45,029 nucleotides of DNA from positions 1 to 45,029 of the forward strand of contig NIVC01003545.1 of the NCBI GenBank assembly GCA_002269645.1. The letters are read 5' to 3'. The notes under the pieces are model-generated. The model was not told the DNA's origin and ran no database searches. It saw nothing but the letters and a program-made list of their open reading frames with translations. This DNA comes from Macrostomum lignano (lineage: Eukaryota). Numbering within the stretch: position 1 is the stretch's first letter; every line of letters starts with the position of its first letter. The position numbers and the translations under genes are program-made. Shown piece after piece: positions 7,083 to 44,912 of the stretch.

Positions 7083-7950
7083 ATTTCATACTACATTTCG
7101 TCAAAACACATTTATATTTGCTTACCTGCTTGAAGGCTAATAAAATCTCTATTGCTACTAGAGAGTATTCAATAATTTTACACCAATTTATAGAATTGAG
7201 CGGGACTCACGGATACTGTGTGGTAGTGCTGTCAGTGATCAGGGATAATGATGCTGAGGGGAACGATGTGTAAGGGATGTCTGGGGGGGGGTGATGCTGA
7301 GATGCTGAACTTTGTTGAGTGAGATGCTGGTGGCTGGGATTTTATCAGCTGGTCTTTGGTCCTATGTTGTGGTTGAATCGCCTAGTTAAACCTATAGACA
7401 TCAGACTTTCAACTATTTGCTCAGAGGCAGCTTCGCGAGCTCTCCGCACCTGAAGCATTGCTAAGCATTGCTCAGAACAAGAGCTTCCGACAAAGGGAAT
7501 GCCTTACTTAATTTTTATTAACCCAGTTACATTCTTGCTTTTAGTTTTTAAAGAACAATTACCAAATGTACATACAAGAAATTGTGATTTGCGACAACAA
7601 AAAATGCAATGTATTAGGCATTCTGTCAAAACTGAATACACGGCGTCAACATTTAATGCAAATTGTCGTTATTGACATGAAGATAGTCAAAATTGATAAG
7701 GAATCCGATTTTGGTGCTGCCAAAGCTGCCACAATTGATTGGGAATCCAATTCGTTTTGTTATTGTGTCAGAATTGATTAACAATTTGTCAATTTTGTTG
7801 CTTCTGGTTCAAATTTGAATGCAGCAGATGTAGAAATAATATATTTACACCCTAGAAACCGCTGAACTCAAGATCTAAGTTTTGAGTAGCAGTTTAAGCT
7901 TCACAGTTTTACTTTACACTGTAAGGTATCTACAACTATTGATAAATTAT

Positions 7951-8525
7951 GGAAGCTTAGCAGAAGATTGAGTCTTGATGGGAGCTTAGCAGAAGATTGA
8001 GTCTTGATGGGAGCTTAGCAGAGGGCTGAGTCTTGATGGGAGCTTAGCAGAGGGCTGAGTCTTGATGGGAGCTTAGCAGAGGGCTCGATGAGTCTTGATG
8101 GGAGCTTAGCAGAGGGCTCGATGAGTCTTGATGGGAGCTTAGCAGAGGGCTCGATGAGTCTTGATGGGAGCTTAGCAGAAGATTGAGTCTTGATTGGAGC
8201 TTAGCAGAAGATTGAGAGCTTAGCAGAAGATTGAGTCTTGATGGGAGCTTAGCAGAAGATTGAGTCTTGATGGGAGCTTAGCAGAAGATTGAGTCTTGAT
8301 GGGAGCTTAGCAGAAGATTGAGTCTTGATGGGAGCTTAGCAGAAGATTGAGTCTTGATGGGAGCTTAGCAGAGGGCTGAGTCTTGATGGGAGCTTAGCAG
8401 AAGATTGAGTCTTGATGGGAGCTTAGCAGAAGGGCTGAGTCTTGATGGGAGCTTAGCAGAGGGCTGAGAGTCTTGATGGGAGCTTAGCAGAGGGCTGATA
8501 GTCTTGATGGGAGCTTAGCAGAGGG
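7951..8525. repeat. Satellite A array 1 (29-33 bp unit, GAGTCTTGATGGGAGCTTAGCAGAAGATT)
   Basis: About 19 tandem copies, directly visible. Confidence 0.97.
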
Positions 8526-9388
8526 ACTTGCAGCGACCAAGTCAGGAGAAATAGGACTGACTGAATGAGGTGACATATTGCTGGTTTTGACTGCTGTAAT
8601 AGAATGCCCAAAAAACGTGGGAAAAGCCGCAAATTTGAAACGAAAATCTACGAAATGCAACGAATATCGAATGTTTATTTGCTAGAACAATAACTGACTG
8701 AAAGCCTATTAAATTGGCAACTACTGGATAATTGGTTATAAAATCAATTAAATATTTTAGGAATAAAAACGCGAAAGTCACATGGAAATAAAAAATGGGA
8801 TCGATCTATTGTTTTTCTCAAATTAGCACAAAACGAAGTCTCGTTGCATAAAATATCAACTTTGCGCAGGGCATTCTGAACGACACTAATTATATGAACA
8901 TTGACAATAGCTTAACAAAGACCACAGCTCATGAACTCAAAAAAATTCGGATACTTTACGCCTGTTACAAAAATTAAAGTTTCTAAGAAGCTTCAAAATG
9001 CCCGTTGCACAAATCTTGATTTCATGGCGCTATATGGACAGTGCAAACTGAATTAAAGTGAATATACAAGTAGAAAGCGGAGCTTGAGATATTGTAATTC
9101 ATTAGTTTTTTCATTAATTCACCAATCACCTGAAAACCAATTGAGCAAATTCAAATCTGCGCCAAAGTTTTCAACACCTTCTAAACGCAGGATTCGCAAG
9201 CTTCTCTCAGAACTCAAATGGAAATTTTGACGCAGCTTTGATTTCGATAAAACTGAACGAACAAAGCTGCAGGATCTGAGGAGATGCAGCAGAAGGGTAA
9301 AAAGTGAAATGAAAAGCGTCGTACTGAGAAAATATGCAACAGTTTGTCCTCATTATGGACTGAGTCAGCAGGTGATCGCGAAGGCCAC

Positions 9389-11234
9389 TCAGAAACCAAT
9401 GCGAATGTAACCCTGGCAGGGTCGTTTGAAAGTCTCAGAGTAGCAAAACAGCTCCACTGCGCGAGCATGCAGTGACTCTGTCAGCTCGATAAGCTCCTTT
9501 TCGATCGAATCCCAATTCTTCTCGTCCTGCACCATCTCTGCAGTCTGATTCAACACATTTCTCGCATAGGCATCCAACGCATTGAATAGCGAATTGAATT
9601 CAGCGTGCACTGGTTTGGTAGCGATCACGTTCACTAAATCCAGCATTAGGCCGCGCAGATTTGTGAAGGCAGCTCGCAGTAGCTTGTCTGCATGGCCTCG
9701 CCCCACCAGGGGCTTGGCCAACTCGGTTATCTCATTGCGCAGGTTCAGCAGCTGCTCGTCGATTTCCAGGGCGTTCGGTAATTCCTTCACCAAATTCGCT
9801 TTCCGAAACATTTTCAGACTCTTCTTTGAGCTCCTGTCTTTGAGGTCACTCAGCAGCTCCTTGGATTCCACTATGCTGTGTGTACCAACTAACACGAACC
9901 AGAGTGTTCTACTGCTAGCGCACTCGGTCCATTGAGCTGGCACTCGCTCACTTAACGGAAAGCCGGGCTCAAATAGGCGCATCTGCTCCTCGGAGATTCT
10001 GCCAACTGCCTGTGCAATTTCCAGCAAGCTCGACCTCAGAAAACTCGGAACTCGACCTAACTGAACTTCAGCGAACTTGTTGGAAAGCTCCATCACTGCG
10101 GAGGCCTGTTTGAGTAGAGCAGCTGAGATGTTCTTTGACTCTAGGATTTCCGTGCTCATCTCCTTGGAGCACATTGCTTTATAGTACTGCATTAGTTGCT
10201 CAGAGCGATCGCGCCGCCTCTTGGTCTGATGACGGAAATCACTTAGCTTTCCAAGCTGTTCGTGCAACGGAATTGAGTCATTTACGAACTTCTCCAGTTT
10301 TTTGGTCAAGGATAGAACAACGCTGTCCGGGCTTCTGCTTTTCGGCGGGAATATTTGACGAATCACGAGACTCTCTTTGCTTGTTTTCGAAATCTTCTCA
10401 AGAGTATCTGCGTGCGGCTTCAGCTCCTTGCTTAGACTCGTGGCTTCACCCTTAGTTGTCAGGTCCAATTCCGGTTCTTGAATAAAAGCCGCCAGGACGT
10501 CTTCACCAGCTTTCGCTCGGTCTGCGTAAGTCAGCAACAGCTTGCATTTCTCTTTTACTGTTTCGTAGTCGATCCATCGTGTTCGTAGCACCTTCAGCGA
10601 TGCAACTATGTTCACGACGCTCTGGCTGCTAGATTTGCTCAGCCCTTGAATGAGGAGGTCCCAGTCTTGCTCTATGGAATTCATTAATTCCTTGATGTTT
10701 TTACGAGTGGATTTTATGTCACAAACAATGCAATGGAGCTCGAAGGCGAAGTCAGGAAGACACTTGGCGCGCAAAGAGAGGTCCTTTACAGCAGTCAATA
10801 CTGAACAGATTGCGTTGTTTGCTCTGTCCGGATGCCACGAACGTTTCGACTCGTCGCTCAGGCGTTTGGCAATCTCTTGCGGCTGATTCACTCTGATGTT
10901 ATAAACAGTAGCAATTTCGTTCCGCAATGACCTGCCCACAGCTGCGAAAATTCTCGCCGCAGAAAGTGTCAGAAATGGCGCATAGGCCCTGGTGTTTATC
11001 GTCTGCTGAGCCCAGTTATTCATGGCATCGGGCTTGTCAATATTTTCATCGAAGAGCGCCACCACACAGATCCGGCCATCGCCATTTGCTTCAAGCGGCA
11101 GCAGAAGGCTGATGCTGACGCCCACCGACGTGCAATTCTCGCTGGTCAGCTGTTCGTAGAAGCCTTTCTGCAGGTCTGGCTGACCCGCAGCTGCCATCCG
11201 CCTCCGCGGTTGGGCCTCCTGTTGCTCTGGTTCT
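9389..11234 (-). CDS. Exon 2 of uncharacterised ~787-aa alpha-helical protein (paralog 1), with a degenerate J-domain-like HPD segment
   Basis: 602-aa ORF that stays open 37 nt upstream to the acceptor AATCTTTCGCAG| at 11235/11234 (phase 2). The paralog is also intact. Confidence 0.85.
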
Positions 11235-11936
11235 CTGCGAAAGATTTAACTTTTCATTTTGCTTAAAGCTGCATTTTTTGCATAGACAACTGAGATAGAA
11301 GGAAATGCATTGTCTAGCAATTTGACGATCATTATTCACATTTTTAATGCAGAACAATCCATTACTGCAAGCAATGGATAAATAACCGGCGCTCGCCAGA
11401 CAATCGTTGTCACGCACTGGGACCGCTGATTATTTATCCATTGGCTGGATAGTCTAATTTAGTTCTCTAGCACTGTTTGCATCCTACGAGAAAGCATCTT
11501 CCAAGCCACAAGTTTAATGCAAAACCAGTGGAGTTATTAATGTTTTTTTAGCTTTTTTGTTTCTTAGTGTTTGTTAAAACGGTATGTTAGCATATCTCAT
11601 AATGCCTACCTACTTTTATCAGAACCCCCGCCACGCCCAACTTTTCTTCACTTCCTGCTGAAATTTTAAGCTTTCAAAGATTTCATGAAACTTCGCTAAT
11701 TTTAAGCGACATGCTACTGCTATGAAAACTTACAATTTTTTTTCCAAACTTGTACTCGTATTTAAGATATAAATTGATGTCCCGTGACAATGCCATTCGT
11801 AGCTGGATATTTTGGTGTACGTGTTTTTATGCCAAAAATTCGTCCTATATCGGGAGTGTATTTCTTTCATCCGCCAGTGATGTGAGGGCGGTTTAATTAA
11901 CTTATCAACTATAGCAAAATGACAGCTCTGCCTTGG

Positions 11937-12819
11937 CTCGCTAATGCTCACCTTTGTCTCTCTAATGCTCTCCCCGTCTCTCTAATGCTCACCTTTGTCT
12001 CTCTAATGCTCCCCCCGTCTCTCTAATGCTCTCCCCGTCTCTCTAATGCTCTCCCCGTCTCTCTAATGCTCACCTTTGTCTCTCTAATGCTCTCCCCGTC
12101 TCTCTAATGCTCACACCTTTGTCTCTCTAATGCTCTCCCCGTCTCTCTAATGCTCACCTTTGTCTCTCTAATGCTCTCCCCGTCTCTCTAATGCTCACAA
12201 TTGTCTCTCTAATGCTCTCCCCGTCTCTCTAATGCTCACCTTTGTCTCTCTAATGCTCTCCCTGTCTCTCTAATGCTCTCCCCGTCTCGCTAATGCTCTC
12301 CCCGTCTCGCTAATGCTCTCCCTGTCTCTCTAATGCTCTCCCCGTCTCTCTAATGCTCTCCCCGTCTCTCTAATGCTCACCTTTGTCTCTCTAATGCTCT
12401 CCCCGTCTCTCTAATGCTCACCTTTGTCTCTCTAATGCTCTCACTGTCTCTCTAATGCTCTCCCCGTCTCGCTAATGCTCTCCCCGTCTCGCTAATGCTC
12501 TCCCTGTCTCTCTAATGCTCTCCCCGTCTCTCTAATGCTCTCCCCGTCTCTCTAATGCTCACCTTTGTCTCTCTAATGCTCTCCCCGTCTCTCTAATGCT
12601 CACCTTTGTCTCTCTAATGCTCTCACTGTCTGTCTAATGCTCTCCCCGTCTCTCTAATGCTCTCACTGTCTCTCTAATGCTCTCCCCGTCTCTCTAATGC
12701 TCTCCCCGTCTCTCTAATGCTCACCTTTGTCTCTCTAATGCTCTCCCCGTCTCTCTAATGCTCTCCCCGTCTCTCTAATGCTCACCTTTGTCTCTCTAAT
12801 GCTCTCCCTGTCTCTAATG
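11937..12819. repeat. Satellite B array 1 (20-21 bp unit CTCTCTAATGCTCTCCCCGT / CTCACCTTTGT variant), intronic
   Basis: Tandem copies visible. This array is absent from the second duplication copy. Confidence 0.97.
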
Positions 12820-13284
12820 TTTTGCATGGACAATTGAAATAGAAGGAAATGCATTGGCCGGATAGGAAGTCTCCAGTTCTCTAGCACTGTTTGCATCCTA
12901 CGAGAAAGCATCTTCCAAGCCACAATTTTAATGCGTTTTTATAAAATGGTACCAGCGAGTTCCGGCAATATTACAGTTGTCTTGTTGGGGCATTTTTGAG
13001 CTGATTTGAACGAAACACACTCGCTTCATTTTTTGACTTGGAATGTCAAGACGGTGGAATTAGGTGAGGAGACATTGGGAGCTTAGTACTAAAACCCTGA
13101 AAATTCCCAATCTGGCCAATGCATTTTGCCATGAAGACCTGCATCCTACCCAGTAGAATTGTTACAATCGACAGTCTTTTCAAAACATAGCATAATGCAT
13201 AAAGAGTATTTTCGTATGAAACCGATTCATCAAAAAGTGCGCACTACGATTAATGCATGACTAAAACAAAAGACAAAACACAGT

Positions 13285-14818
13285 GTCTATCTCGCTAATA
13301 GTCACCCTGTCTGTCTAATGCTCTCCCTGTCTCTCTAATGCTCTCCCTGTCTCTCTAATGCTCTCCCTGTCTCTCTAATGCTCTCCCTGTCTCTCTAATG
13401 CTCTTCCTGTCTCTCTAATGCTCTCCCTGTCTCTCTAATGCTCTCCCTGTCTCTCTAATGCTCTCCCTGTCTCTCTAATGCTCTCCCTGTCTCTCTAATG
13501 CTCTCCCTGTCTCTCTAATGCTCTCCCTGTCTCTCTAATGCTCTCCCTGTCTCTCTAATGCTCTCCCTGTCTCTCTAATGCTCTCCCTGTCTCTCTAATG
13601 CTCTCCCTGTCTCTCTAATGCTCTCCCTGTCTCTCTAATGCTCTCCCTGTCTCTCTAATGCTCTCCCTGTCTCTCTAATGCTCTCCCTGTCTCTCTAATG
13701 CCCTCCCTGTCTCTCTAATGCTCTCTCTGTCTCTCTAATAGCCACCCTGTCTGTCTAATGCTCTCCCCGTCTCTCTAATGCTCTCCCTGTCTCTCTAATG
13801 CTCTCCCCGTCTCTCTAATGCCCTCCCTGTCTCTCTAATGCTCTCCCTGTCTCTCTAATGCTCTCCCGTCTCTCTAATACTCTCCCTATCTCGCTAATAG
13901 CCACCCTGTCTGTCTAATGCTCTCCCTGTCTCTCTAATGCTCTTCCTGTCTCTCTAATGCTCTCCCTGTCTCTCTAATGCTCTTCCTGTCTCTCTAATGC
14001 TCTCCCTGTCTCTCTAATGCTCTCCCTGTCTCTCTAATGCTCTCCCTGTCTCTCTAATAGCCACCCTGTCTGTCTAATGCTCTCCCTGCCTCTCTAATGC
14101 TCTCCCTGTCTCTCTAATGCTCTCCCTGTCTCTCTAATGCTCTCCCCGTCTCTCTAATGCTCTCCCTGTCTCTCTAATGCTCTCCCTGTCTCTCTAATGC
14201 TCTCCCTGTCTCTCTAATAGCCACCCTGTCTCTCTAATGCTCTCCCTGTCTCTCTAATGCTCTTCCTGTCTCTCTAATGCTCTCCCCGTCTCTCTAATGC
14301 TCTCCCTGTCTCTCTAATGCTCTCCCTGTCTCTCTAATGCTCTCCCTGTCTCTCTAATAGCCACCCTGTCTGTCTAATGCTCTCCCTGCCTCTCTAATGC
14401 TCTCCCTATCTCGCTAATAGCCACCCTGTCTGTCTAATGCTCTCCCTGTCTCTCTAATACTGTCCCTATCTCGCTAATAGCCACCCTGTCTGTCTAATGC
14501 TCTCCCTGTTTCTCTAATGCTCTCCCTGTCTCTCTAATGCTCTTCCTGTCTCTCTAATGCTCTCCCTGTCTCTCTAATACTCTCCCTATCTCGCTAATAG
14601 CCACCCTGTCTCTCTAATGCTCACCTTTGTCTCTCTAATGCTCTCCCTGTCTCTCTAATAATCTCCCTATCTCGCTAATAGCCACCCTGTCTCTCTAATG
14701 CTCACCTTTGTCTCTCTAATGCTCAGCCTGTCTCTCTAATGCTCTCCCCGTCTCTCTAATGCTCTCCCTGTCTCTCCAATGCTCTTCCCATCTCGATAAT
14801 AGTCACCCTGATTCTCTA
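13285..14818. repeat. Satellite B array 2 (20-bp unit CTCTCTAATGCTCTCCCTGT), intronic
   Basis: About 76 tandem copies, with ATAGCCACCC variants. Confidence 0.98.
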
Positions 14819-14820
14819 AC

Positions 14821-14947
14821 ACGGGCGTAGGAGCGGAGAATGTGGCGATGTATCCCCCGAACAGCCTAAAAAGTTTTTGAGAAATCAGGTTTTTCTTTAC
14901 GGATGGCCAACCCCCCCCCCTCGAGAAAATTTCAGACTACGCGCCTG
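14821..14947. mobile_element. Short element with GGCGTAG / CTACGCGCCTG inverted ends (copy 1)
   Basis: Imperfect terminal inverted repeats. The matching element in copy 2 is at 31386-31673. Confidence 0.45.
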
Positions 14948-15221
14948 ATCTCTACTGAATCTCCTTGTCTCTTCAACAAGTTAAAGGAACTTGTAGGTTG
15001 AATCTCCTATCAGACTCATAGCAGTCTCATATGCGTACTGGAATCTTGGAAGGTGAAATATTGACCATTTTTCGTGCTAAAATGTAAAAAATGAAAATCT
15101 TGCAAATGCTTTTTTATTTAGTCTTCAAAAAAATCCCGCTTGTTGTGTGCCTCTGGTTGGACAAAACATGAATGCGCATTTTATTCGGTAACGAAAGAAA
15201 AGCTTTTGGTTAAGAACTCAC

Positions 15222-15739
15222 CGTCTAGACCAGAACCTCACTGCCTCTTCGGGATACCTAGACACATCGTAGTCGAAATTTTTGACGCGGGGCGTGCAGT
15301 AGACCAGGCAGCCGTAGGCCTGGGCAGTAAAATAGTGGGTGCAGCTGGTGTCTGATTTGTTTTGTTGAATCAGAACCGTGCAGCGCGGCATCGAGCTCAA
15401 GCGGTCTCGATATGCAGTGCGGCGTTCCATGTAGTGAAACACTTTCTTGGCCTCAAGGCTCAGAGAATTGCTAAGACAAAGCTGTGGCAATTCTTTATCA
15501 GTTTTGTGATAATATCGAGTCCTGTTGATTTCCCAGCCAACTCTCTCCTGAAGACGCAAACGCTCGTGCTGGATGAAGTTGTTAGTGTCGCTGTGCCTCA
15601 AACGTCGAAGAATTTTATCGTAGGCTTCCTCAGACACATCCGGCCTTGGGTCCAGACAGTGCAGCGTTGCCTTCAGGCTGACTCTGATTTTGGCCGCTAG
15701 CCGCTCTCTTTCACTTCTCGAGGTGCGCTGCTCAGCCAT
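15222..15739 (-). CDS. Exon 1 of uncharacterised ~787-aa protein (paralog 1)
   Basis: ATG in CACCATGG context at 15739. The ORF runs into the consensus donor AGACG|GTGAGT (phase 2), which matches the phase-2 acceptor at 11234. 518+1846 = 2364 nt = 788 codons including the stop. Confidence 0.8.
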
Positions 15740-15791
15740 GGTGTGAGACTCGGGCGCCAAGCTCAGAACAGGCGGGCAGGCCTGTTTGCCG

Positions 15792-15990
15792 CTATAATAT
15801 ACCACAGTGTCTGCAGCTGGTGTCAACTTTTATTCGATCAATATTTAGAAGCACTCACGACAGCACCCTCGATTCAACTTGTACTCTGTCTGAGGCCTGC
15901 CCAACCAATCATGTTGCTCACTCATTTACTCATTCTCAGGAATGTACACAGCCAGACTTTCGGGGTTGGCCCTCATTGGTTTGAATCGTA
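15792..15990 (-). promoter_or_regulatory. Putative promoter/5' UTR: two CCAAT boxes and a possible 67-nt 5' UTR intron
   Basis: CCAAT at 15905-15909 (+) and 15975-15979 (-), both conserved in copy 2 (32642 and 32774). GTGAGT...ATTATAG spans 15858-15792 and is also conserved. Confidence 0.35.
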
Positions 15991-16209: not shown

Positions 16210-16957
<748 letters not shown>

Positions 16958-19124: not shown

Positions 19125-20142
19125 CATTGTATTTATACTTTCACTCAGCGCTCAGTCATTATTCCACACTTTTGCGGCCATTATTCCACACTTTTGCGGC
19201 CATTATTCCACACTTTTGAGGCCATTATTCCACACTTTTGCGGTCATTATTCCACACTTTTTATCATGCTTCAATTGGCTGTTTTAAGAGTTGTTTTACC
19301 CATAGACGACTGAGTTGTGTGGCTTAGTTTGACCATAGACAACACTGTGATGAGTGCTGATTTTGCTTGCGTCTTGCAAGAAATCAGGAAAGCGAGTAGT
19401 GGGAGAAAAAGCTATTTGTCTTGTCAAACAACTATGGCTGGTGCATCTCGTCAAACAGCCGAGCTTATTAATTGAAAAAATCTTCCTGTCGACGACTGAA
19501 CGAACCGTGCGACGCTACCTAGGAAGAAAACGCGACCATGCAGTCCTCAACGCCTCGACGGCTATAAGCGATGCCTCAAAGCGGCCAATCGATTCAGTCG
19601 AGCAGCCGGCAGTCCCAAAGAATCCCAGCTTGGATACTGCGGTACCAAAGAAGCTCATCAGACGAAGCTCATCAGCCGCAAGCCAACTTAACCAAGACGT
19701 GCATCTTTCAAATGGTAAGTTCGGCAACTATACTTGAGCACCTGTATTTCTCTTTCATAGAAAACATTCAACATAGACCAACTCCTTTTGCAGTGCCAAA
19801 TCATCAGGCTAGAGTGTCGAGCATCTTTGGAAACTGCGGCTTTGAGAACTGTGTATGTTTCACTTTTGGGTGACAAATTGATTTTTACATTGTCAAATTT
19901 TGACTACAAACTGATAAACTGCACTACCTGTGACATTTATTATGAACTCTTTTCGTGTAGCTGGTACTTTAGTTTCAATGATTTTTCTTTTTGTTCATTT
20001 ACTTCTTGTTGTTCTGTATTTATTAACAAAAATACTAAGCGATGGATTTTTTCAATCCAAATGTCTATGGTACACATCAAAACTGTGGAATAATGGCCAA
20101 AATATTTTTTCATTGCGTCTGGGTAAAAGTATAATTACAATG
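19125..20142 (+). mobile_element. Non-autonomous DNA-transposon-like element with imperfect long TIRs and a frameshifted HTH-containing ORF
   Basis: The left end CATTGTATTTATACTTTCACTCAG...CATTATTCCACACTTTT...CCATAGAC is mirrored by the right end GTCTATGG...AAAACTGTGGAATAATGG...GGGTAAAAGTATAATTACAATG. ATG at 19350 gives MSADF...QTAELIN, which shifts into FLSTTERTVRRYLGRKR (transposase-type HTH). A donor G|GTAAGT lies near 19714. Confidence 0.6.
19157..19261. repeat. 22-bp subterminal tandem repeat (CATTATTCCACACTTTTGCGGC), ~4.8 copies
   Basis: Directly visible. A single inverted copy lies at ~20079-20100. Confidence 0.95.
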
Positions 20143-23100
20143 AGTCTTGATGGCAGCTTAGCAGAGGGCTGAGAGTCTTGGTGACAGCTTAGCAGAGAGC
20201 TGAGAGTCTTGGTGGGAGCTTAGCAGAGGGCTGAGAGTCTTGATGGCAGCTTAGCAGAGGGCTGAGAGTCTTGGTGGCAGCTTAGCAGAGGGCTGAGAGT
20301 CTTGGTGACAGCTTAGCAGAGGGCTGAGAGTCTTGGTGGCAGCTTAGCAGAGGGCTGAGAGTCTTGATGGCAGCTTAGCAGAGGGCTGAGAGTCTTGATG
20401 GGAGCTTAGCAGAGGGCTGAGAGTCTTGGTGGGAGCTTAGCAGAGGGCTGAGAGTCTTGATGGGAGCTTAGCAGAGGGCTGAGAGTCTTGGTGGGAGCTT
20501 AGCAGAGGGCTGAGAGTCTTGGTGGGAGCTTAGCAGAGGGCTGAGAGTCTTGGTGGGAGCTTAGCAGAGGGCTGAGAGTCTTGATGGGAGCTTAGCAGAG
20601 GGCTGAGAGTCTTGATGGCAGCTTAGCAGAGGGCTGAGAGTCTTGATGGCAGCTTAGCAGAGGGCTGAGAGTCTTGGTGGCAGCTTAGCAGAGGCCTGAG
20701 AGTCTTGATGGGAGTTTAGCAGAGGGCTGAGAGTCTTGATGGCAGCTTAGCAGAGGGCTGAGAGTCTTGGTGGGAGCTTAGCAGAGGGCTGAGAGTCTTG
20801 ATGGCAGCTTAGCAGAGGGCTGAGAGTCTTGATGGGAGCTTAGCAGAGGGCTGAGAGTCTTGATGGGAGCTTAGCAGAGGGCTGAGAGTCTTGGTGGCAG
20901 CTTAGCAGAGGCCTGAGAGTCTTGATGGGAGCTTAGCAGAGGGCTGAGAGTCTTGATGGGAGCTTAGCAGAGGGCTGAGAGTCTTGGTGGGAGCTTAGCA
21001 GAGGGCTGAGAGTCTTGGTGGGAGCTTAGCAGAGGGCTGAGAGTCTTGATGGCAGCTTAGCAGAGGGCTGAGAGTCTTGGTGGGAGCTTAGCAGAGGGCT
21101 GAGAGTCTTGGTGGCAGCTTAGCAGAGGGCTGAGAGTCTTGATGGGAGCTTAGCAGAGGGCTGAGAGTCTTGGTGGCAGCTTAGCAGAGGGCTGAGAGTC
21201 TTGATGGGAGATTAGCAGAAGGTTAAATCTTGATGGGAGCTTAGCAGAGGGCTGAGAGTCTTGATGGCAGCTTAGCAGAGGGCTGAGAGTCTTGGTGGCA
21301 GCTTAGCAGAGGGCTGAGAGTCTTGGTGGCAGCTTAGCAGAGGGCTGAGAGTCTTGGTGGCAGCTTAGCAGAGGGCTGAGAGTCTTGGTGGCAGCTTAGC
21401 AGAGGGCTGAGAGTCTTGATGGGAGCTTAGCAGAGGGCTGAGAGTCTTGGTGGCAGCTTAGCAGAGGGCTGAGAGTCTTGATGGGAGATTAGCAGAAGGT
21501 TAAATCTTGATGGGAGCTTAGCAGAGGGCTGAGAGTCTTGATGGGAGCTTAGCAGAGGGCTGAGAGTCTTGGTGGCAGCTTAGCAAAGGGCTGAGAGTCT
21601 TGGTGGCAGCTTAGCAGAGGGCTGAGAGTCTTGATGGGAGCTTAGCAGAGGGCTGAGAGTCTTGGTGGCAGCTTAGCAGAGGGCTGAGAGTCTTGGTGGG
21701 AGCTTAGCAGAGGGCTGAGAGTCTTGATGGGAGCTTAGCAGAGGGCTGAGAGTCTTGGTGGCAGCTTAGCAGAGGGCTGAGAGTCTTGGTGGCAGCTTAG
21801 CAGAGGGCTGAGAGTCTTGGTGGCAGCTTAGCAGAGGGCTGAGAGTCTTGGTGGCAGCTTAGCAGAGGGCTGAGAGTCTTGATGGGAGCTTAGCAGAGGG
21901 CTGAGAGTCTTGGTGGCAGCTTAGCAGAGGGCTGAGAGTCTTGATGGGAGATTAGCAGAAGGTTAAATCTTGATGGGAGCTTAGCAGAGGCCTGAGAGTC
22001 TTGATGGCAGCTTAGCAGAGGGCTGAGAGTCTTGGTGGCAGCTTAGCAGAGGGCTGAGAGTCTTGGTGGCAGCTTAGCAGAGGGCTGAGAGTCTTGGTGG
22101 CAGCTTAGCAGAGGGCTGAGAGTCTTGGTGGCAGCTTAGCAGAGGGCTGAGAGTCTTGATGGCAGCTTAGCAGAGGGCTGAGAGTCTTGATGGGAGATTA
22201 GCAGAAGGTTAAATCTTGATGGGAGCTTAGCAGAGGCCTGAGAGTCTTGATGGCAGCTTAGCAGAGGGCTGAGAGTCTTGGTGGCAGCTTAGCAGAGGCC
22301 TGAGAGTCTTGATGGGAGCTTAGCAGAGGGCTGAGAGTCTTGGTGGCAGCTTAGCAAAGGGCTGAGAGTCTTGGTGGCAGCTTAGCAGAGGGCTGAGAGT
22401 CTTGATGGGAGCTTAGCAGAGGGCTGAGAGTCTTGGTGGCAGCTTAGCAGAGGGCTGAGAGTCTTGATGGGAGCTTAGCAGAGGGCTGAGAGTCTTGATG
22501 GGAGCTTAGCAGAGGGCTGAGAGTCTTGGTGGGAGCTTAGCAGAGGGCTGAGAGTCTTGGTGGCAGCTTAGCAGAGGGCTGAGAGTCTTGGTGGCAGCTT
22601 AGCAGAGGGCTGAGAGTCTTGGTGGGAGCTTAGCAGAGGGCTGAGAGTCTTGATGGGAGCTTAGCAGAGGGCTGAGAGTCTTGGTGGGAGCTTAGCAGAG
22701 GGCTGAGAGTCTTGGTGGAAGCTTAGCAGAGGGCTGAGAGTCTTGATGGGAGCTTAGCAGAGGGCTGAGAGTCTTGGTGGCAGCTTAGCAGAGGGCTGAG
22801 AGTCTTGATGGGAGCTTAGCAGAGGGCTGAGAGTCTTGGTGGCAGCTTAGCAGAGGGCTGAGAGTCTTGGTGGGAGCTTAGCAGAGGGCTGAGAGTCTTG
22901 ATGGGAGCTTAGCAGAGGGCTGAGAGTCTTGGTGGCAGCTTAGCAAAGGGCTGAGAGTCTTGGTGGCAGCTTAGCAGAGGGCTGAGAGTCTTGATGGGAG
23001 CTTAGCAGAGGGCTGAGAGTCTTGGTGGCAGCTTAGCAGAGGGCTGAGAGTCTTGGTGGCAGCTTAGCAGAGGGCTGAGAGTCTTGGTGGGAGCTTAGCA

Positions 23101-23322
23101 GAGGGCTGAGAGTCTTGATGGGAGCTTAGCAGAGGGCTGAGAGTCTTGGTGGGAGCTTAGCAGAGGGCTGAGAGTCTTGGTGGAAGCTTAGCAGAGGGCT
23201 GAGAGTCTTGATGGGAGCTTAGCAGAGGGCTGAGAGTCTTGGTGGAAGCTTAGCAGAGGGCTGAGAGTCTTGATGGGAGCTTAGCAGAGGGCTGAGAGTC
23301 TTGGTGGCAGCTTAGCAGAGGG
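20141..23322. repeat. Satellite A large array (31-bp unit GAGAGTCTTGATGGGAGCTTAGCAGAGGGCT), ~100 copies
   Basis: Tandem copies with GAT/GGT and GGA/GCA variants. Confidence 0.99.
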
Positions 23323-24167
23323 ACTTGCAGCGACCATAAGTGAGGCGCAAATGAGCTGAGACAGACTAAATGAGCTGAGATTGCTGGTTTTGACTGCTGT
23401 AATAGAATGCCCAAAAATGTAGAAAGGCGCAAGTTTAAAACGAAAATCTACGGAATATCGAAAACGAAAATCGAATGTTTATTTGATGCAAACAACAACT
23501 GAGTGAAGGCCTATTGAATTGGCAACAATTTAATAATCGGTTATCCGTTATCAATATTTTAGGAATAAAAAAGGAAAAATCGCATGGAAATAAAAAACAA
23601 TCTTGTTGCAGTTGTTTGTATATTCTTTATTACGAGCGTAGTGTCGTTGCATAAAACGTAATCTCCCATATTAAATTTGTGCGCAGGGAATTCTGAACGA
23701 CACTAATAATCAACGATGGTTCTTGTACTCCGAAATTCGGTTCAGTATTAAACACGTATTTCATCAAAACGTACCACCATTCCCGTGAAAGTTTTAATAT
23801 GAAGCTTCAAAATGCCCTTTGCACAAAATCTGATTTCTTGGCGCTATACGGACAGTGCAAAATGAATTAAAATCAAAACACGAGTAGAAAGCAATGCTAG
23901 AGACAAATAATTCGTTTTTAATAATAAAGACGTTCGTCAAATTCAAATTCAACACCTTCTAAACGCCGGATTCGCAAGCTTCTCTCAGAACTCAAATAGC
24001 AATTTTGACGCAGCTTCGATTTCGATAAAACTGAACGAACAAAACTGCAGGATCTGAGGAGGTGCAGCAGAGGGGTAAAAAATTGAAATGAAAAACGTCG
24101 TACCGAGAAAATATGCAACAGTTTGTCCTCATTGTGGACTGAGTCAGCAGGTGATCGCGAAGGCCAC

Positions 24168-26019
24168 TCAGAAACCAATGCGGATGTAATAATCGTACTG
24201 GCAGTGTCGTTTAAAAGTTTCAGAGCAGCAAAACAGCACCAGTGCGTTAGCCTGCAGTGACTCTGTCAGCTCGATAAGCTCCTTTTCGATCGAATCCCAA
24301 TTTTTCTCGTCCTGCATCATCTTTGCAGTCCGATTCAACACGTATCTCACATAGGCATCCAACGCCTTGATTAGCGAGCGGAATTCATTGTGCACTGGTT
24401 TGGTAGCGACCAAGTTCATAAAATTCGGTGTTAGGCCGCGCAGCCTTGCGAAGGCAGCTCGCAGTATTTTGTCAGCACTGTCTGGCCCCACCAGGGACTC
24501 GGCCAACTTGGTTATCTCATCGCGCAGGTTCAGCAGCTGCTGGTTGATTTCCAGGGCGTTCGGTAATTCCTTCACCAAATTCGCATCCCGAAACTCATTC
24601 AGACTCTTCTTTGAGCTCCTGTCTTTGAGGTCACTCAGCAGCTCCTTGGATTCCACTATGCTGTGTGTACCAACTAACACGCACCTGAGCGTTCTACTGC
24701 TAGCGCACTCGGTCCATTGAGCTGGCACTCGCTCACTTAACGGAAAGCCGGGCTCAAATAGGCGCATCTGCTCCTCGGAGATTCTGCCAACTGCCTGTGC
24801 AACTTCCAGCAATTTCGATCCCTCGGAACTCGGAACTGGATCCAAAGGAATTGCAGGCAACCTGTCGGAAAGCTCAAACACTACGTAAGCCTGTTCGAGT
24901 AGAGCAGTTGAGATGTTCTTTGACTCTAGGATTTCCGTGCTCATCTCCTTGGAGCACATTGCATTATAGTACTGCATTAGTTGCTCAGAGCGATCGCGCC
25001 GCCTCTTGGTCTGATGACGGAAATCACTTAGCTTTCCAAGCTGTTCGTGCAACGGAATTGAGTCATTTACGAACTTCTCCAGTTTTTTGGTCAAGGATAG
25101 AACAACGCTGTCCGGGCTTCTGCTTTTCGGCGGGAATTTCTGACGAATCATGAGACTCTCTTTGCTTGTTTTCGAAATCTTCTCAAGAGTATCTGCGTGC
25201 GGCTTCAGCTCCATGCTTAGACTCGTGGCTTCACCCTTAGTTGTCAGGTCCAATTCCGGTTCTTGAATAAAAGCCGCCAGGACGTCTTCACCAGCTTTCG
25301 CTCGGTCTGCGTAAGTCAGAAACAGCTTGCATTTCTCTTTTACTGTTTCGTAGTCGATCCATCTTGTTCGTAGCGCCTTCAGCGATGCAACTATGTTCAT
25401 GACGCTCTGGCTGCTAGATTTGCTCAGCCCTTGAATGAGGAGGTCCCAGTCTTGCTCTATGGAATTCATTAATTCCTTGATGTCTTTACGAGTGGATTTT
25501 ATGTCACAAACAATGCAATGGAGCTCGAAGGCGAAGTCAGGAAGACACTTGGCGCGCAAAGAGAGGTCCTTTACAGCAGTCAATACTGAACAGATTGCGT
25601 TGTTTGCTCTGTCCGGATGCCACGAACGTTTCGACTCGTCGCTCAGACGTTTGGCAATCTTTTGCGGCTGAATTACTCTGGTGTTATAAACAGTAGCAAC
25701 TTCTTTCTGCAATGACGTGCCCACAGTCATGAAAATTCTCGCCGCAGAAAGTGTCAGAAATGGCGCATAGGCCCTGGTGTTTATCGTCTGCTGAGCCCAG
25801 TTATTCATGGCATCGGGCTTGTCAATATTTTCATCGAAGAGCGCCACCACACAGATCCGGCCTTCGCCTTTTGCTTCAAGCGGCAGCAGAAGGCTGATGC
25901 TGACGCCCACCGACGTGCAATTCTCGCTGGTCAGCTGTTCGTAGAAGCCTTTCTGCAGGTCTGGCTGACCCGCAGCTGCCATCCGCCTCCGCGGTTTCGC
26001 CTCCTGTTGCTCCGGTTTT
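24168..26019 (-). CDS. Exon 2 of uncharacterised ~792-aa alpha-helical protein (paralog 2)
   Basis: 604-aa ORF, open upstream to the conserved acceptor AATCTTTCGCAG| (26020/26019, phase 2). WHPDR is retained. Confidence 0.85.
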
Positions 26020-26184
26020 CTGCGAAAGATTTAACTTTTCATTTTGCTTAAAGCTGCATTTTTTTGCATAGACAACTGAGATAGAAGGAAATGCATTGTC
26101 TAGCAATGTGACGATCATTATTCACATTTTTAATGCAGAACAATCCATTACTGCAAGCAATGGATAAATAACCGGCGCTCGCCA

Positions 26185-26400
26185 GACAATCGTTGTCACG
26201 CACTGGACCACTGATTCTTTGCATTGTTTTTCTGTTTGACGATCCTACAGACAATGCATTGTTTGTAGTAATGGATTGTCCTGCATTAAAAATGTGAATA
26301 ATGATCGTCAAATTGCTAAACAATGCAATATCTGTAGGATCGTCAAACAGAAAAACAATGCAAAGAATCAGCGGTCGCAGCACGTGACAACGATTTGTCT
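26185..26400. repeat. Inverted-repeat insertion in the intron of paralog 2
   Basis: ~65-bp arms at 26185-26247 and 26330-26400. The core is an inverted copy of 26090-26160, and 26175-26218 recurs directly at ~26412-26458. Confidence 0.8.
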
Positions 26401-26896
26401 ATGGCTCGCCTAGCGGCGCTCGCCAGACAATCGTTGTCACGCACTGGGACCGCTGATTATTTATCCATTGGCCGGATAGTCTAATTTAGTTCTCTAGCAC
26501 TGTTTGCATCCTACGAGAAAGCATCTTCCAAGCTAGAAATTTAATGCGTTTTTATAAAATGGTACCAGCGAGTTCCGGCAAAATTACAGTTGTCTCTGTT
26601 GGGGCATTTTAGAGCTGATTTGAACGAAACACACTCGCTTCATTTTTTGACTTTGAAAGTCAAGACGGTGGAATTAGGTGAGGAGACATTGGGAGCTTAG
26701 TACTAAAACCCTGAAAATTCCCAATCTGGCCAATGCATTTTGCCATGAAGACTGCATCCTACCCAGTAGAATTGTTACAATCGACAGTCTTTTCAAAACA
26801 TAGCATAATGCATAAAGAGTATTTTCGTATGAAACCAATTCATCAAAAAGTGCGCACTACGATTAATGCATGACTAAAACAAAACACAAAACACAG

Positions 26897-29800
26897 TGTC
26901 TATCTCGCTAATAGTCACCCTGTCTGTCTAATGCTCTCCCTGTCTCTCTAATGCTCTCCCTGTCTCTCTAATGCTCTCCCTGTCTCTCTAATGCTCTCCC
27001 TGTCTCTCTAATGCTCTCCCTGTCTCTCTAATGCTCTCCCTGTCTCTCTAATGCTCTCCCTATCTCTCTAATGCTCTCCCTGTCTCTCTAATGCTCTCCC
27101 TGTCTCTCTAATGCTCTCCCTGTCTCTCTAATGCTCTCCCTGTCTCTCTAATGCTCTCCCTGTCTCTCTAATGCTCTCCCTGTCTCTCTAATGCTCTCCC
27201 TGTCTCTCTAATGCTCTCCCTGTCTCTCTAATGCTCTCCCTGTCTCTCTAATGCTCTCCCTGTCTCTCTAATGCTCTCCCTGTCTCTCTAATGCTCTCCC
27301 TGTCTCTCTAATGCTCTCCCTGTCTCTCTAATGCTCTCCCTGTCTCTCTAATGCTCTCCCTGTCTCTCTAATGCTCTCCCTGTCTCTCTAATGCTCTCGA
27401 TGTCTCTCTAATGCTCTCCCTGTCTCTCTAATGCTCTCCCTGTCTCTCTAATGCCCTCCCTGTCTCTCTAATAGCCACCCTGTCTCTCTAATAGCCACCC
27501 TGTCTGTCTAATGCTCTCCCTGTCTCTCTAATAGCCACCCTGTCTCTCTAATAGCCACCCTGTCTGTCTAATGCTCTCCCTGTCTCTCTAATGCTCTCCC
27601 TGTCTCTCTAATAGCCACCCTGTCTGTCTAATGCTCTCCCTGTCTCTCTAATAGCCACCCTGTCTGTCTAATGCTCTCCCTGTCTCGCTAATAGCCACCC
27701 TGTCTGTCTAATGCTCTCCCTGTCTCTCTAATACTCTCCCTGTCTCTCTAATGCTCTCCCTGTCTCTCTAATGCTCTCCCTGTCTCTCTAATGCTCTTCC
27801 TGTCTCGCTAATTGCAACGCTGTCTGTCTAATGCTCTCCCTGTCTCTCTAATGCTCTCCCTGTCTGTCTAATGCTCTCCCTGTCTGTCTAATGCTCTCCC
27901 TGTCTCTCTAATGCTCTCCCTGTCTCGCTAATAGCCACCCTGTCTGTCTAATGCTCTACCTGTCTGTCTAATGCTCTCCCTGTCTCTCTAATGCTCTCCC
28001 TGTCTGTCTAATGCTCTCCCTGTCTCTCTATTGCTCTCCCTGTCTCTCTAATGCTCTCCCTGTCTGTCTAATGCTCTCCCTGTCTCTCTAATGCTCTCCC
28101 TATCTCGCTAATAGCCACCCTGTCTGTCTAATGCTCTCCCTGTCTCTCTAATGCTCTCCCTGTCTCTCTAATGCTCTCCCTGTCTCTCTAATGCTCTCCC
28201 TGTCTCTCTAATGCTCTCCCTGTCTCTCTAACGCTCTCCCTGTCTCTCTAATGCTCTCCCTGTCTCTCTAATGCTCTCCCTGTCTCTCTAATGCTCTCCC
28301 TGTCTCTCTAATGCTCTCCCTATCTCGCTAATAGCCACCCTGTCTGTCTAATGCTCTCCCTGTCTCTCTAATGCTCTCCCTGTCTCTCTAATGCTCTCCC
28401 GGTCTCGCTAATAGCCACCCTGTCTGTCTAATGCTCTCCCAGTCTCTCTAATGCTCTCCCTGTCTCTCTAATGCTCTCCCTGTCTCTCTAATGCTCTCCC
28501 TGTCTCTCTAATGCTCTCCCTATCTCGCTAAAAGCCACCCTGTCTCTCTAATGCTCTCCCTATCTCGCTAATGCTCTCCCTGTCTCTCTAATAGCCACCC
28601 TGTCTGTCTAATGCTCTCCCTGTCTCTCTAATGCTCTCCCTGTCTCTCTAATGCTCTCCCTGTCTTTCTAATGCTCTCCCTGTCTCTAATGCTCTCCCTG
28701 TCTCTCTAATGCTCTCCCTGTCTCTCTAATAGCCACCCTGTCTCTCTAATGCTCTCCCTGTCTCTCTAATGCTCTCCCGGTCTCTCTAATACTCTCCCTA
28801 TCTCTCTAATGCTCTCCCTGTCTCTCTAATGCTCTCCCTGTCTTTCTAATGCTCTCCCTGTCTCTAATGCTCTCCTTTGTCTCTCTAATGCTCTCCCTGT
28901 CTCTCTAATGCTCTCCCGGTCTCGCTAATAGCCACCCTGTCTGTCTAATGCTCTCCCTATCTCTCTAATGCTCTCCCTGTCTCTCTAATGCTCTCCCTGT
29001 CTCTCTAATGCTCTCCCTGTCTCGCTAATAGCCACCCTGTCTGTCTAATGCTCTCCCTGTCTCTCTAATGCTCTCCCTGTCTCTCTAATGCTCTCCCTGT
29101 CTCTCTAATGCTCTCCCTGTCTCTCTAATGCTCTCCCTATCTCGCTAAAAGCCACCCTGTCTCTCTAATGCTCTCCGTATCTCGCTAATGCTCTCCCTGT
29201 CTCTCTAATAGCCACCCTGTCTGTCTAATGCTCTCCCTGTCTCTCTAATGCTCTCCCTGTCTCTCTAATGCTCTCCCTGTCTTTCTAATGCTCTCCCTGT
29301 CTCTAATGCTCTCCCTGTCTCTCTAATGCTCTCCCTGTCTCTCTAATAGCCACCCTGTCTCTCTAATGCTCTCCCTGTCTCTCTAATGCTCTCCCGGTCT
29401 CTCTAATACTCTCCCTATCTCTCTAATGCTCTCCCTGTCTCTCTAATGCTCTCCCTGTCTTTCTAATGCTCTCCCTGTCTCTAATGCTCTCCTTTGTCTC
29501 TCTAATGCTCTCCCTGTCTCTCTAATGCTCTCCCTGTCTCTCTAATAGCCACCCTGTCTGTCTAATGCTCTCCCTATCTCTCTAATGCTCTCCCTGTCTC
29601 TCTAATAGCCACCCTGTCTGTCTAATGCTCTCCCTATCTCTCTAATGCTCTCCCTGTCTCTCTAATAGCCACCCTGTCTCTCTAATAGCCACCCTGTCTG
29701 TCTAATGCTCTCCCTGTCTCTCTAATGCTCTCCCTGTCTCTCTAATACTCTCCCTATCTCGCTAATAGCCACCCTGTCTCTCTAATGCTCTCCCTGTCTC

Positions 29801-31375: not shown

Positions 31376-31385
31376 TTTTTCTAAA

Positions 31386-31673: not shown

Positions 31674-31949
31674 CTCTCTACTGAATCTCCCTGTTTCTTC
31701 ATCAAGTTAAAGGAACTTGTAGGTTGAATCTCCTATCAGACACATAGCAGTCTCATATGCGTACTGGAATCTTGGAAGGAGAAATATTCACCATTTTTCG
31801 TGCTAAAATGTGAAAAATGAAAATCTCACAAACGCCTTTTTTGTTTAGCATCCAAATGAAATCCCGCTTGTTGTGTGCCTCTGGTTGGACAAAACATGAA
31901 TGCACATTTTATTCGGTAACGAAAGAAAAGCTTTTGTTTAAGAACTCAC

Positions 31950-43576: not shown

Positions 43577-43589
43577 GAGGAAGATGTAC

Positions 43590-43923: not shown

Positions 43924-43949
43924 CTTGAGTGACAGAGCGAGTGATGGAG

Positions 43950-44895: not shown

Positions 44896-44912
44896 TGAAG
44901 TGACGGAATGGA

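What the first reader, a model, noticed from the sequence alone, without database searches (positions are those of the whole stretch)
9389..15739. Two apparently separate ORFs form one ~790-aa orphan-like gene spliced across a satellite-filled intron, present in two intact copies
Seen: the 202-aa ORF ends at AGACG|GTGAGT (phase 2). The 602-aa ORF stays open upstream to TTTCGCAG|A, also phase 2. The join reads ...VRFWSRR-EPEQQEAQPRRR-MAAAG. The Kozak-type start, donor, acceptor and frame are all conserved in the paralog (32476-31950 joined to 26019-24168). Its indels of 9 nt and 6 nt preserve the frame. Inference: an expressed lineage-specific gene family that I cannot assign to a known family. 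It has a mixed alpha/beta N-terminal part and a long helical C-terminal bundle.
Basis: partly seen in the sequence, partly recalled or inferred. Interest (0 to 1): 0.72.

Follow-up and report, generated by a model that had tools for sequence, protein, structure and literature searches.

The report
Annotated flatworm orphan gene, duplicated
The two open reading frames are the two coding exons of one real gene of the flatworm Macrostomum lignano, present as a tandem pair; public databases already list it as a hypothetical protein, and it has no detectable relatives outside this species, so it is an ordinary species-restricted gene of unknown function.

Summary
The window is contig NIVC01003545.1 of the Macrostomum lignano Mlig_3_7 assembly. 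Joining 15739..15222 to 11234..9389 (minus strand, GTGAGT...CAG, phase 2) gives a 787-aa protein identical over its full length to GenBank PAA50879.1 (hypothetical protein BOX15_Mlig030318g3). That annotation was built from RNA-seq transcript assemblies. The paralog model (792 aa) is 791/792 identical to UniProt A0A1I8J233. So the spliced gene is real but already annotated.

No family could be assigned:
- Pfam and PDB searches (single sequence and profile) found nothing.
- A 5.8-billion-protein word search and an exhaustive HMMER scan of 1.84 billion representatives found only this M. lignano family.
- Two AlphaFold2 runs gave unusable models (pLDDT 36 and 38).

The two copies differ by 175 substitutions and two in-frame indels. 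dN/dS is about 1.2, yet neither copy has a stop codon (simulated P = 0.002). A 179-nt promoter block is 98% identical, and the central coding part looks homogenised by gene conversion.

Best reading: a transcribed, fast-evolving, species-restricted gene for a soluble, mostly helical 90-kDa protein. Low interest.

The parts
15740..15918 (-). Copy A: conserved 179-nt upstream block (putative core promoter and 5'UTR) with a TATA-like GTATATTATAG about 55 nt upstream of the ATG and an ATTGG motif. The duplication ends sharply at its distal edge.
   Evidence: 98.3% identical between A and B, against 92.6% for the CDS. Nearly invariant in 5 copies from 3 contigs, and similarity stops abruptly upstream. 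The promoter function is inferred.
15222..15739 (-). Copy A coding exon 1 (518 nt, aa 1-172 plus 2 nt). ACCATGG start at 15739, donor AGACG|GTGAGT.
   Evidence: Identical to the N-terminus of PAA50879.1. The donor fits the M. lignano cis-donor motif GT[G/A]AG (PMC8629364).
11235..15221 (-). Copy A intron (3987 nt). Contains two blocks of a 20-nt satellite (TRF 11925-14785, about 140 copies) separated by a unique island of about 470 nt.
   Evidence: The annotated gene spans it.
9389..11234 (-). Copy A coding exon 2 (1846 nt including the stop, aa 173-787). Acceptor TTTCGCAG|A. An internal in-frame ATG at 11197 starts the mechanical 602-aa ORF.
7949..9388 (-). Copy A 3' flank (8526-9388, part of the duplicated unit) followed by a 29-nt satellite (7949-8522).
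   Evidence: The self-alignment runs 7950-11435 against 22716-26220. Satellite from TRF. The flank is about 77% identical to that of B and has many indels that are not multiples of 3.
32477..32655 (-). Copy B: the same conserved 179-nt upstream block.
31950..32476 (-). Copy B coding exon 1 (527 nt). Same start context and donor. Carries a 9-nt insertion relative to A.
   Evidence: Included in UniProt A0A1I8J233. Not included in the Mlig_3_7 model of copy B.
26020..31949 (-). Copy B intron (5930 nt). The same 20-nt satellite at 26903-31353 (about 223 copies) and a 41-nt repeat at 31495-31635.
24168..26019 (-). Copy B coding exon 2 (1852 nt including the stop). Carries a 6-nt insertion near the C-terminus. 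Annotated on its own as the 604-aa PAA50882.1 (Mlig002417g1).
20142..24167 (-). Copy B 3' flank (23323-24167) and a 31-nt satellite (20142-23322) related to the 29-nt satellite that lies 3' of copy A.

Best explanation
What it is. This is a real, transcribed, two-coding-exon nuclear gene of the flatworm Macrostomum lignano. It sits in a tandem duplication of about 8-10 kb. Each unit holds a 179-nt promoter block, exon 1, an intron that has filled with a 20-nt satellite, exon 2, a 3' flank and a 29/31-nt satellite. Ordinary GT-AG cis-splicing removes the 4-6 kb intron and joins the exons in phase 2, giving 787-aa and 792-aa proteins.

The protein. It is restricted to this species as far as the databases reach. 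It is a basic (pI about 9), soluble protein of about 90 kDa with no signal peptide and no membrane segment, and it is predicted to be mostly alpha-helical.

Likely role (inferred, low confidence, about 0.25). It is most likely a non-enzymatic intracellular scaffold or adaptor protein. A conserved KRRRDR motif hints that it may be nuclear.

How it evolves. Selection keeps the reading frame and the promoter, but amino-acid replacements accumulate as fast as silent changes. The central third of the two paralogs is kept nearly identical, most simply by gene conversion.

Shown here: the gene structure, its identity to the annotated coding sequences, the absence of detectable homologs, the substitution pattern and the preserved ORF. 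Inferred: transcription (from how the annotation was made), promoter function, gene conversion and the type of protein function.
For: Gene model and transcription:
- The spliced translation equals PAA50879.1 at 100% identity and coverage, and a second contig carries the 787-aa model PAA50883.1.
- The annotation is RNA-seq derived (PMC5730564).
- The copy B model equals UniProt A0A1I8J233 at 791/792 residues.
- Donor, acceptor, phase and ACCATGG start are intact in every full copy on three contigs.

Selection on the reading frame and promoter:
- No stop codon after 175 substitutions. Simulated P = 0.002 overall, 0.10 for exon 1 alone and 0.017 for exon 2 alone.
- Only two indels in the CDS, both multiples of 3, against 26 in the non-coding flanks, mostly not multiples of 3.
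- The upstream 179 nt are 98.3% identical.

Rate and pattern of change:
- dN = 0.081, dS = 0.067, ratio 1.2.
- Substitutions are strongly clustered. Identical runs of 174 and 162 nt exceed the simulated 99.9th percentile of 149 nt, and dS falls to 0.02-0.04 in the centre.

Orphan status:
- No Pfam hit and no PDB hit by sequence or profile.
- Only M. lignano proteins among 5.8 billion and among 1.84 billion representatives scanned exhaustively with HMMER.

Protein properties:
- pI 8.95; the highest 19-residue Kyte-Doolittle mean is 1.23; no internal repeats.
- Helices are predicted over about 240-770.
Against: - I saw no RNA reads. Transcript support is second-hand, through the published annotation method.
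- The same annotation models copy B on three contigs as exon 2 only (604 aa), so exon 1 may not always be joined.
- dN/dS of about 1 is also what a non-functional sequence would show. The excess over 1 in the C-terminal part (63 non-synonymous against 13 synonymous changes) does not look significant by my own rough hand estimate.
- Exon 1 alone has only weak evidence of ORF preservation (P about 0.10).
- The functional guess rests on composition and on low-confidence models (mean pLDDT 36 and 38). The Foldseek matches are generic helical bundles with E > 0.01 and query-normalised TM-score at most 0.14.
- The databases may not hold proteomes of other Macrostomum species, so 'species-restricted' may really mean 'genus-restricted'.
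Confidence: 0.85

Rival explanations
1. Two products rather than one. The exon-2 ORF is expressed on its own as a 602/604-aa protein starting at the ATG 37 nt after the acceptor. This could happen by spliced-leader trans-splicing onto the same acceptor or from a start site inside the intron. Exon 1 would then be a separate short cistron (174 aa, with the stop overlapping the GTGAGT) or non-coding. The full-length 787-aa form would be absent or a minor isoform.
For: - Mlig_3_7 annotates copy B as a 604-aa exon-2-only gene under a different transcript-cluster name (Mlig002417g1) on three contigs.
- The annotation pipeline cuts transcriptional units at trans-splice sites.
[quoted passage not shown] Operon spacers are often inflated by repeats (PMC8629364).
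- After subtracting the satellite, intron A is only about 1.1 kb, close to that paper's 1-kb operon threshold (my arithmetic).
Against: - Copy A is annotated as the spliced 787-aa CDS on two contigs, and copy B as 792 aa in the older annotation.
- A consensus cis donor GTGAGT sits upstream in cis, which favours cis-splicing (rule quoted).
- The acceptor TCGCAG does not fit the trans-splice-enriched motif [T/C]TNCAG.
- The exon-1 ORF, its phase and its Kozak-type ATG are kept in all copies.
- The near-identical central regions and the satellite intron could easily have fragmented the copy B transcript assembly.
Confidence: 0.1
2. Non-functional sequence. The ORFs are decaying or neutrally drifting relics, for example a dead gene or a passenger of the surrounding repeats and retroelements. 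They are transcribed only incidentally, and the open frames have survived by luck or because the duplication is recent.
For: - dN/dS is about 1.0-1.2 between paralogs and 0.8-2.4 among near-identical copies.
- No homolog anywhere.
- The gene sits among satellites and reverse-transcriptase fragments.
- AlphaFold2 finds no confident fold.
Against: - The probability of no stop codon after 175 random substitutions is 0.002.
- Indels in the CDS are 13-fold rarer than in the flanks and are only multiples of 3.
- The promoter block is conserved at 98%.
- All full copies on three contigs are intact.
- Copy number is low (only the A and B types), and the protein has no transposon domain.
- The frameshifted copies on two other contigs look like unpolished contig-end errors: 7 indels against 3 substitutions, and 14 against 19.
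Confidence: 0.05

Closest known systems
GenBank PAA50879.1 / PAA50883.1 (hypothetical proteins BOX15_Mlig030318g3 / g2, M. lignano; UniProt A0A267DQP5 / A0A267DNL0)
   Same: PAA50879.1 is the very protein encoded by copy A: 787 aa, 100% identity and coverage, same gene span 15739..9389. PAA50883.1 is the near-identical copy on contig NIVC01003544.1.
   Different: Nothing differs; this is the same gene. The records carry no function, no domain and no literature.
UniProt A0A1I8J233 (792 aa) and A0A1I8GBJ1 (776 aa), both named 'DHC_N1 domain-containing protein', M. lignano, from the older ML2 annotation
   Different: The dynein-tail name is not reproducible: current Pfam gives no DHC_N1 hit even at E <= 10. 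A0A1I8GBJ1 is a chimeric model. It fuses a reverse-transcriptase zinc-finger tail encoded at 33669-33331 to exon 1 and skips part of exon 2.
GenBank PAA50882.1 (BOX15_Mlig002417g1, 604 aa)
   Same: Exon 2 of copy B, starting from the internal ATG.
   Different: It omits exon 1, which is intact and in phase in the genome. It is either a truncated model or a real shorter isoform.
Fast-evolving, taxonomically restricted genes of Macrostomum (reproduction-related genes in PMC7336406; the flatworm-specific gene studied in PMC5816591)
   Same: No homologs outside the lineage and rapid protein divergence. In this genus, reproduction-related genes are the class shown to evolve fastest and to be hardest to find across species (abstract of PMC7336406).
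   Different: No expression or phenotype data could be found for this gene. The searched supplements, some of them truncated, do not list it. The link to reproduction is only an analogy.

Membership tests
Annotated M. lignano gene Mlig030318 / Mlig002417 (hypothetical protein) | Full-length identity of the spliced translation to the deposited protein, and the same genomic span | tested here: met
   Copy A: 100% identity and coverage to PAA50879.1. Gene range 10001-16351 of the reversed locus equals window 15739..9389. Copy B: 791/792 to A0A1I8J233.
Spliceosomal GT-AG intron (cis-spliced) | Consensus donor and acceptor, compatible phase, conserved in paralogs | tested here: met
   Donor GTGAGT fits the M. 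lignano motif GT[G/A]AG and the acceptor ends in CAG. The sites are identical in A, B and the copies on L001 and L003.
Spliceosomal GT-AG intron (cis-spliced) | Junction-spanning RNA reads | not testable with these tools
   Only indirect support: the GenBank CDS comes from an RNA-seq-based transcript assembly.
Dynein heavy chain N-terminal region 1 (Pfam PF08385, DHC_N1) | Match to the family HMM at or above the gathering score | tested here: not met
   No DHC_N1 hit for either the A or the B protein, even at E <= 10.
Taxonomically restricted (orphan) gene | No detectable homolog outside the lineage in sensitive sequence searches | tested here: met
   Only M. lignano proteins were found in a word-indexed search of 5.8 billion proteins, by single sequence and by profile, the latter down to E <= 10, and in an exhaustive HMMER scan of 1.84 billion representatives. 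PDB profile search: nothing.
Taxonomically restricted (orphan) gene | Absence, or presence only as a diverged ortholog, in sister species (M. cliftonense and other Macrostomum species) | not testable with these tools
   No flatworm genome or transcriptome collection is searchable here.
Retrotransposon or transposon protein | RT, endonuclease, integrase, transposase or gag-like domain in the protein, and high copy number | tested here: not met
   The protein has no such Pfam domain. The family has only A-type and B-type members (8 database sequences). The RT fragments nearby are separate: 17496-18078 and 33289-33669.
SL trans-spliced downstream cistron of an operon | Trans-splice acceptor motif [T/C]TNCAG, no cis donor upstream, repeat-corrected spacer under 1 kb, SL-containing reads | tested here: inconclusive
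   The motif is not matched (TCGCAG) and a strong cis donor is present. The repeat-corrected spacer is about 1.1 kb, which is borderline. SL reads cannot be checked.

The most novel reading that the evidence does not exclude
The family could be a young, rapidly diversifying gene pair under positive selection rather than drift. Amino-acid changes are concentrated in tight clusters in exon 1 and in the C-terminal helices, while gene conversion homogenises the core. Such a gene might act in a conflict-prone process: reproduction (sperm, seminal fluid or the egg-sperm interface) or chromosome and heterochromatin biology, given its satellite-rich setting and its basic protein with an NLS-like motif. 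It would then be a tractable case of an essential or adaptive orphan gene in a flatworm in which RNAi and transgenesis are available.
Probability: 0.12. Interest if true: 0.5.

Novelty: already known. Interest (0 to 1): 0.15.

Why it matters
It matters little beyond bookkeeping. The result shows that reading raw sequence recovered a correct two-exon gene model across a 4-6 kb satellite-filled intron. It also suggests two corrections to public annotation:
- The Mlig_3_7 model of copy B (604 aa) probably lacks its first exon.
- The UniProt name 'DHC_N1 domain-containing protein' is unsupported.

For orphan-gene research it is a tidy example. The paralog pair has a preserved ORF and promoter, dN/dS near 1 and mosaic homogenisation, in an organism where RNAi, in situ hybridisation and transgenesis are routine. 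Such genes are very common in this genome: Table 3 of the genome paper lists 72,846 genes against a PFAM-domain count of 5,819. The case is therefore not surprising.

Tried and rejected
- Pfam scans of both proteins at E up to 10 gave only sub-threshold noise: T4_UVSX_C at E 0.022 and VMAP-M1 at E 0.21.
- PDB sequence search with the single protein and with a family profile found nothing usable.
- AlphaFold2 without an alignment gave mean pLDDT 35.8. With the 6-sequence family alignment it gave 38.1, and only residues 335-518 reached 50-78.
- Foldseek of the better model against the PDB gave only designed helical bundles, BAR domains and similar folds, with E > 0.01 and query-normalised TM-score at most 0.14. 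I treat these as meaningless.
- A profile search of the 5.8-billion-protein set at E <= 10 added nothing.
- Literature searches for the gene and protein identifiers found no paper.
- Supplement searches of four M. lignano papers for Mlig030318 and Mlig002417 found nothing, some tables being truncated in storage. A fifth paper has no supplements held.
- Rfam over the whole window found nothing.
- I considered that the divergent amino-acid blocks were compensated frameshifts. The nucleotide alignment shows clustered substitutions instead, so I rejected this.
- I considered that the frameshifted copies on NIVC01004269.1 and NIVC01002296.1 were pseudogenes. Their indels rival or outnumber their substitutions and lie at contig starts inside the satellite, which is typical of unpolished long-read consensus. 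I judged pseudogenes unlikely.
- I considered a link between the gene and the neighbouring reverse-transcriptase fragments. The fragments lie outside the duplicated unit and differ between the two copies, so I rejected this.


Full report
**Source and observation.** The window is the whole 45,029-bp contig NIVC01003545.1 of the Macrostomum lignano assembly Mlig_3_7 (GCA_002269645.1). M. lignano is a free-living flatworm.

On the minus strand, the 202-aa mechanical ORF (15826..15218) holds a conserved ACCATGG start at 15739. It runs into ...TCTAGACG|GTGAGT at 15222. The frame of the 602-aa ORF (11197..9389) stays open upstream to TTTCGCAG|A at 11234. Joining 15739..15222 to 11234..9389 gives 2364 nt, which translates to 787 aa plus a stop.

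The second copy, 32476..31950 plus 26019..24168, gives 792 aa with identical donor, acceptor and start contexts.

The introns are 3987 and 5930 nt. Most of each is a 20-nt satellite: 11925-14785, about 140 copies, and 26903-31353, about 223 copies.

**The gene is already annotated.** The 787-aa translation is 100% identical over 100% of its length to GenBank PAA50879.1, 'hypothetical protein BOX15_Mlig030318g3' (UniProt A0A267DQP5). The annotated gene span is exactly 15739..9389.

The genome paper states that the GenBank annotation was made from a genome-guided RNA-seq transcript assembly. It used StringTie and TACO, then cut gene boundaries with TBONE using trans-splicing and poly(A) reads, then called ORFs with TransDecoder (PMC5730564). 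The splice junction therefore has transcript support, but I could not inspect the reads myself.

The 792-aa copy B model is 791/792 identical to UniProt A0A1I8J233 from the older ML2 annotation. In Mlig_3_7, however, copy B is modelled only as the 604-aa exon-2 ORF (PAA50882.1, Mlig002417g1) on three contigs.

**Extent of the duplication and other copies.** Self-alignment shows a tandem duplication: 7950-15918 against 22716-32655, at 87-91% nucleotide identity. Each unit contains, in order:
- a 179-nt upstream block;
- exon 1;
- the satellite-bearing intron;
- exon 2;
- about 860 nt of 3' flank;
- a related 29/31-nt satellite.

The same B-then-A pair occurs on contigs NIVC01003544.1 (L001) and NIVC01000578.1 (L003). 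All visible exons there are open and all splice sites are intact. This fits the known redundancy of the assembly, which has 180 Mb in duplicated blocks because the DV1 line carries extra large chromosomes.

Two more contigs start inside the satellite intron and carry A-type exon 2 with many 1-2-nt indels but few substitutions: 7 indels against 3 substitutions, and 14 against 19. I read these as unpolished contig ends rather than pseudogenes.

**Is it a functional coding gene?** The A and B coding sequences differ by 175 substitutions and two indels of 9 and 6 nt. The evidence points in two directions.

Evidence for constraint:
- Random placement of 175 substitutions on the CDS creates a mean of 6.2 stop codons. 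It leaves the frame open in only 0.2% of 20,000 trials. The figure is 9.8% for exon 1 alone and 1.7% for exon 2 alone.
- The non-coding parts of the duplicated unit are more diverged (69-85% identity in global alignments). They carry 26 indels in about 1980 aligned nt, of which only 3 are multiples of three.
- The 179 nt upstream of the ATG are 98.3% identical between A and B and nearly invariant in five copies. They contain a TATA-like GTATATTATAG about 55 nt from the ATG. Similarity ends abruptly beyond this block.

Evidence of little constraint on the amino-acid sequence:
- dN = 0.081 and dS = 0.067, a ratio of 1.2. By region the ratio is 0.99 for exon 1, 0.89 and 1.99 for the two central segments (codons 174-400 and 400-560), and 1.5 for the C-terminal part.

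The changes are strongly clustered. The central 960 nt have about 25 differences. Identical runs of 174 and 162 nt exceed the simulated 99.9th percentile of 149 nt. dS itself drops to 0.02-0.04 in the centre. A drop in silent divergence points to gene conversion between the paralogs rather than to protein-level constraint. The divergent blocks are runs of clustered substitutions, not compensated frameshifts.

My reading is that selection maintains an expressed open reading frame, but most replacements are tolerated or favoured. This is the usual picture for a young, fast-evolving gene.

**What is the protein?** Nothing recognisable was found:
- Pfam gave no hit near threshold for either paralog, even at E <= 10. 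The UniProt name 'DHC_N1 domain-containing protein' is therefore not reproduced.
- The PDB gave nothing by single sequence or by family profile.
- A word-indexed search of 5.8 billion proteins, by single sequence and by profile (the profile run down to E <= 10), returned only the three M. lignano clusters.
- An exhaustive HMMER scan of 1.84 billion cluster representatives also returned only those M. lignano clusters.
- AlphaFold2 gave mean pLDDT 35.8 without an alignment and 38.1 with the six family sequences. Only residues 335-518 reached 50-78, all helical.
- Foldseek against the PDB gave only generic helical bundles, with E > 0.01 and query-normalised TM-score at most 0.14. This is uninformative.

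From the sequence itself, the protein is 90 kDa with pI 8.95. It has no hydrophobic segment that could be a signal peptide or membrane helix (highest 19-residue hydropathy mean 1.23) and no internal repeats. Helices are predicted for residues 1-115 and most of 240-770. A KRRRDR motif is conserved in both paralogs.

I therefore commit, at low confidence, to a soluble intracellular and possibly nuclear non-enzymatic helical scaffold or adaptor. This is inference only.

**Rivals.**
- *Exon 2 expressed on its own.* It could be expressed by SL trans-splicing at the same acceptor or from an intronic start. This is suggested by the 604-aa models of copy B and by how TBONE cuts transcription units. 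Against it stand the spliced models of copy A, the strong cis donor, an acceptor that does not fit the trans-splice motif [T/C]TNCAG, and the maintained exon-1 ORF. It may exist as an extra isoform.
- *Neutral relic.* This fits dN/dS of about 1. It does not fit the absence of stops and frameshifts or the conserved promoter.
- *Transposon protein.* This is excluded by the lack of any such domain and by the low copy number. The reverse-transcriptase fragments nearby lie outside the duplicated unit.

**Novelty and interest.** The gene model is already public, so the finding is already known as an annotation. The protein family is uncharacterised and restricted to this species as far as these databases reach. 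That is common here: Table 3 of the genome paper lists 72,846 genes against a PFAM-domain count of 5,819. Fast-evolving genes that are hard to trace between species are documented in this genus, especially reproduction-related ones (PMC7336406). No paper or searchable supplement mentions this gene.

The practical yield is small:
- The copy B model in Mlig_3_7 probably lacks exon 1.
- A UniProt name is unsupported.
- The pair is a neat candidate for orphan-gene work in a tractable flatworm.

Interest is about 0.15.

Noticed in passing
window 3998-5890 (-): An apparently unannotated DEG/ENaC (amiloride-sensitive sodium channel) gene. Three same-strand ORFs (5588-5905, 4458-5411, 3998-4333) hit the N- and C-terminal ends of Pfam ASC. 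A GT..AG join gives an intact protein of about 513 aa that scores 96.9 bits (E 1.8e-27) against ASC. Only two genes are called on this contig, and neither is this one. The exact splice sites are uncertain.
   Followed up: partly
window 17496-18078 (-) and 33289-33669 (-): Reverse-transcriptase remnants lie upstream of each gene copy, on the same strand and outside the duplicated unit: RVT_1 (E 1e-5) and a zf-RVT tail. The older UniProt model A0A1I8GBJ1 wrongly fuses the second one to exon 1 of copy B.
   Followed up: partly
window 36595-44898; 16210-16957; 20142-23322 and 7949-8522: The contig is largely tandem repeats. These include an 8.3-kb array of a second 20-nt satellite (GTGACTGAGGGAAAGATGCA, about 416 copies), an (ACT)n run of about 249 units, and a 29/31-nt satellite immediately 3' of each gene copy that has expanded from 0.6 kb (A) to 3.2 kb (B).
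   Followed up: no
window 26096-26188 (-): ARAGORN calls a 93-nt tRNA-Ala(tgc)-like sequence inside the intron of copy B, about 77 nt upstream of the acceptor. There is no call at the matching place in copy A and no Rfam hit. It is probably spurious or a tRNA-derived repeat fragment.
   Followed up: no
L004 1-1876 (NIVC01004269.1) and L006 1-2253 (NIVC01002296.1): Two other contigs begin inside the satellite intron of an A-type copy. Their exon 2 carries 7 and 14 small indels against 3 and 19 substitutions, which produced the truncated gene models PAA47991.1 (246 aa) and an 85-aa ORF. The pattern suggests unpolished contig ends where the assembly broke in the satellite.
   Followed up: partly
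L003 20092-20608 (NIVC01000578.1), exon 1 of the A-type copy: This A-type exon 1 is 91% identical in protein to the window's copy A, while the neighbouring B copy is almost identical to the window's B. At 8 of the 61 sites where A and B differ it carries the B state, including a small cluster, and it shares two promoter variants with B. This hints at exchange between the paralogs.
   Followed up: partly
window 2627-2875 / 3282-3525 and 6290-6639: There is an inverted repeat pair (92% identical, about 250 nt arms) flanking a 151-nt tandem duplication, and a 350-nt palindromic segment. Both lie near the DEG/ENaC-like gene. Their nature was not examined.
   Followed up: no
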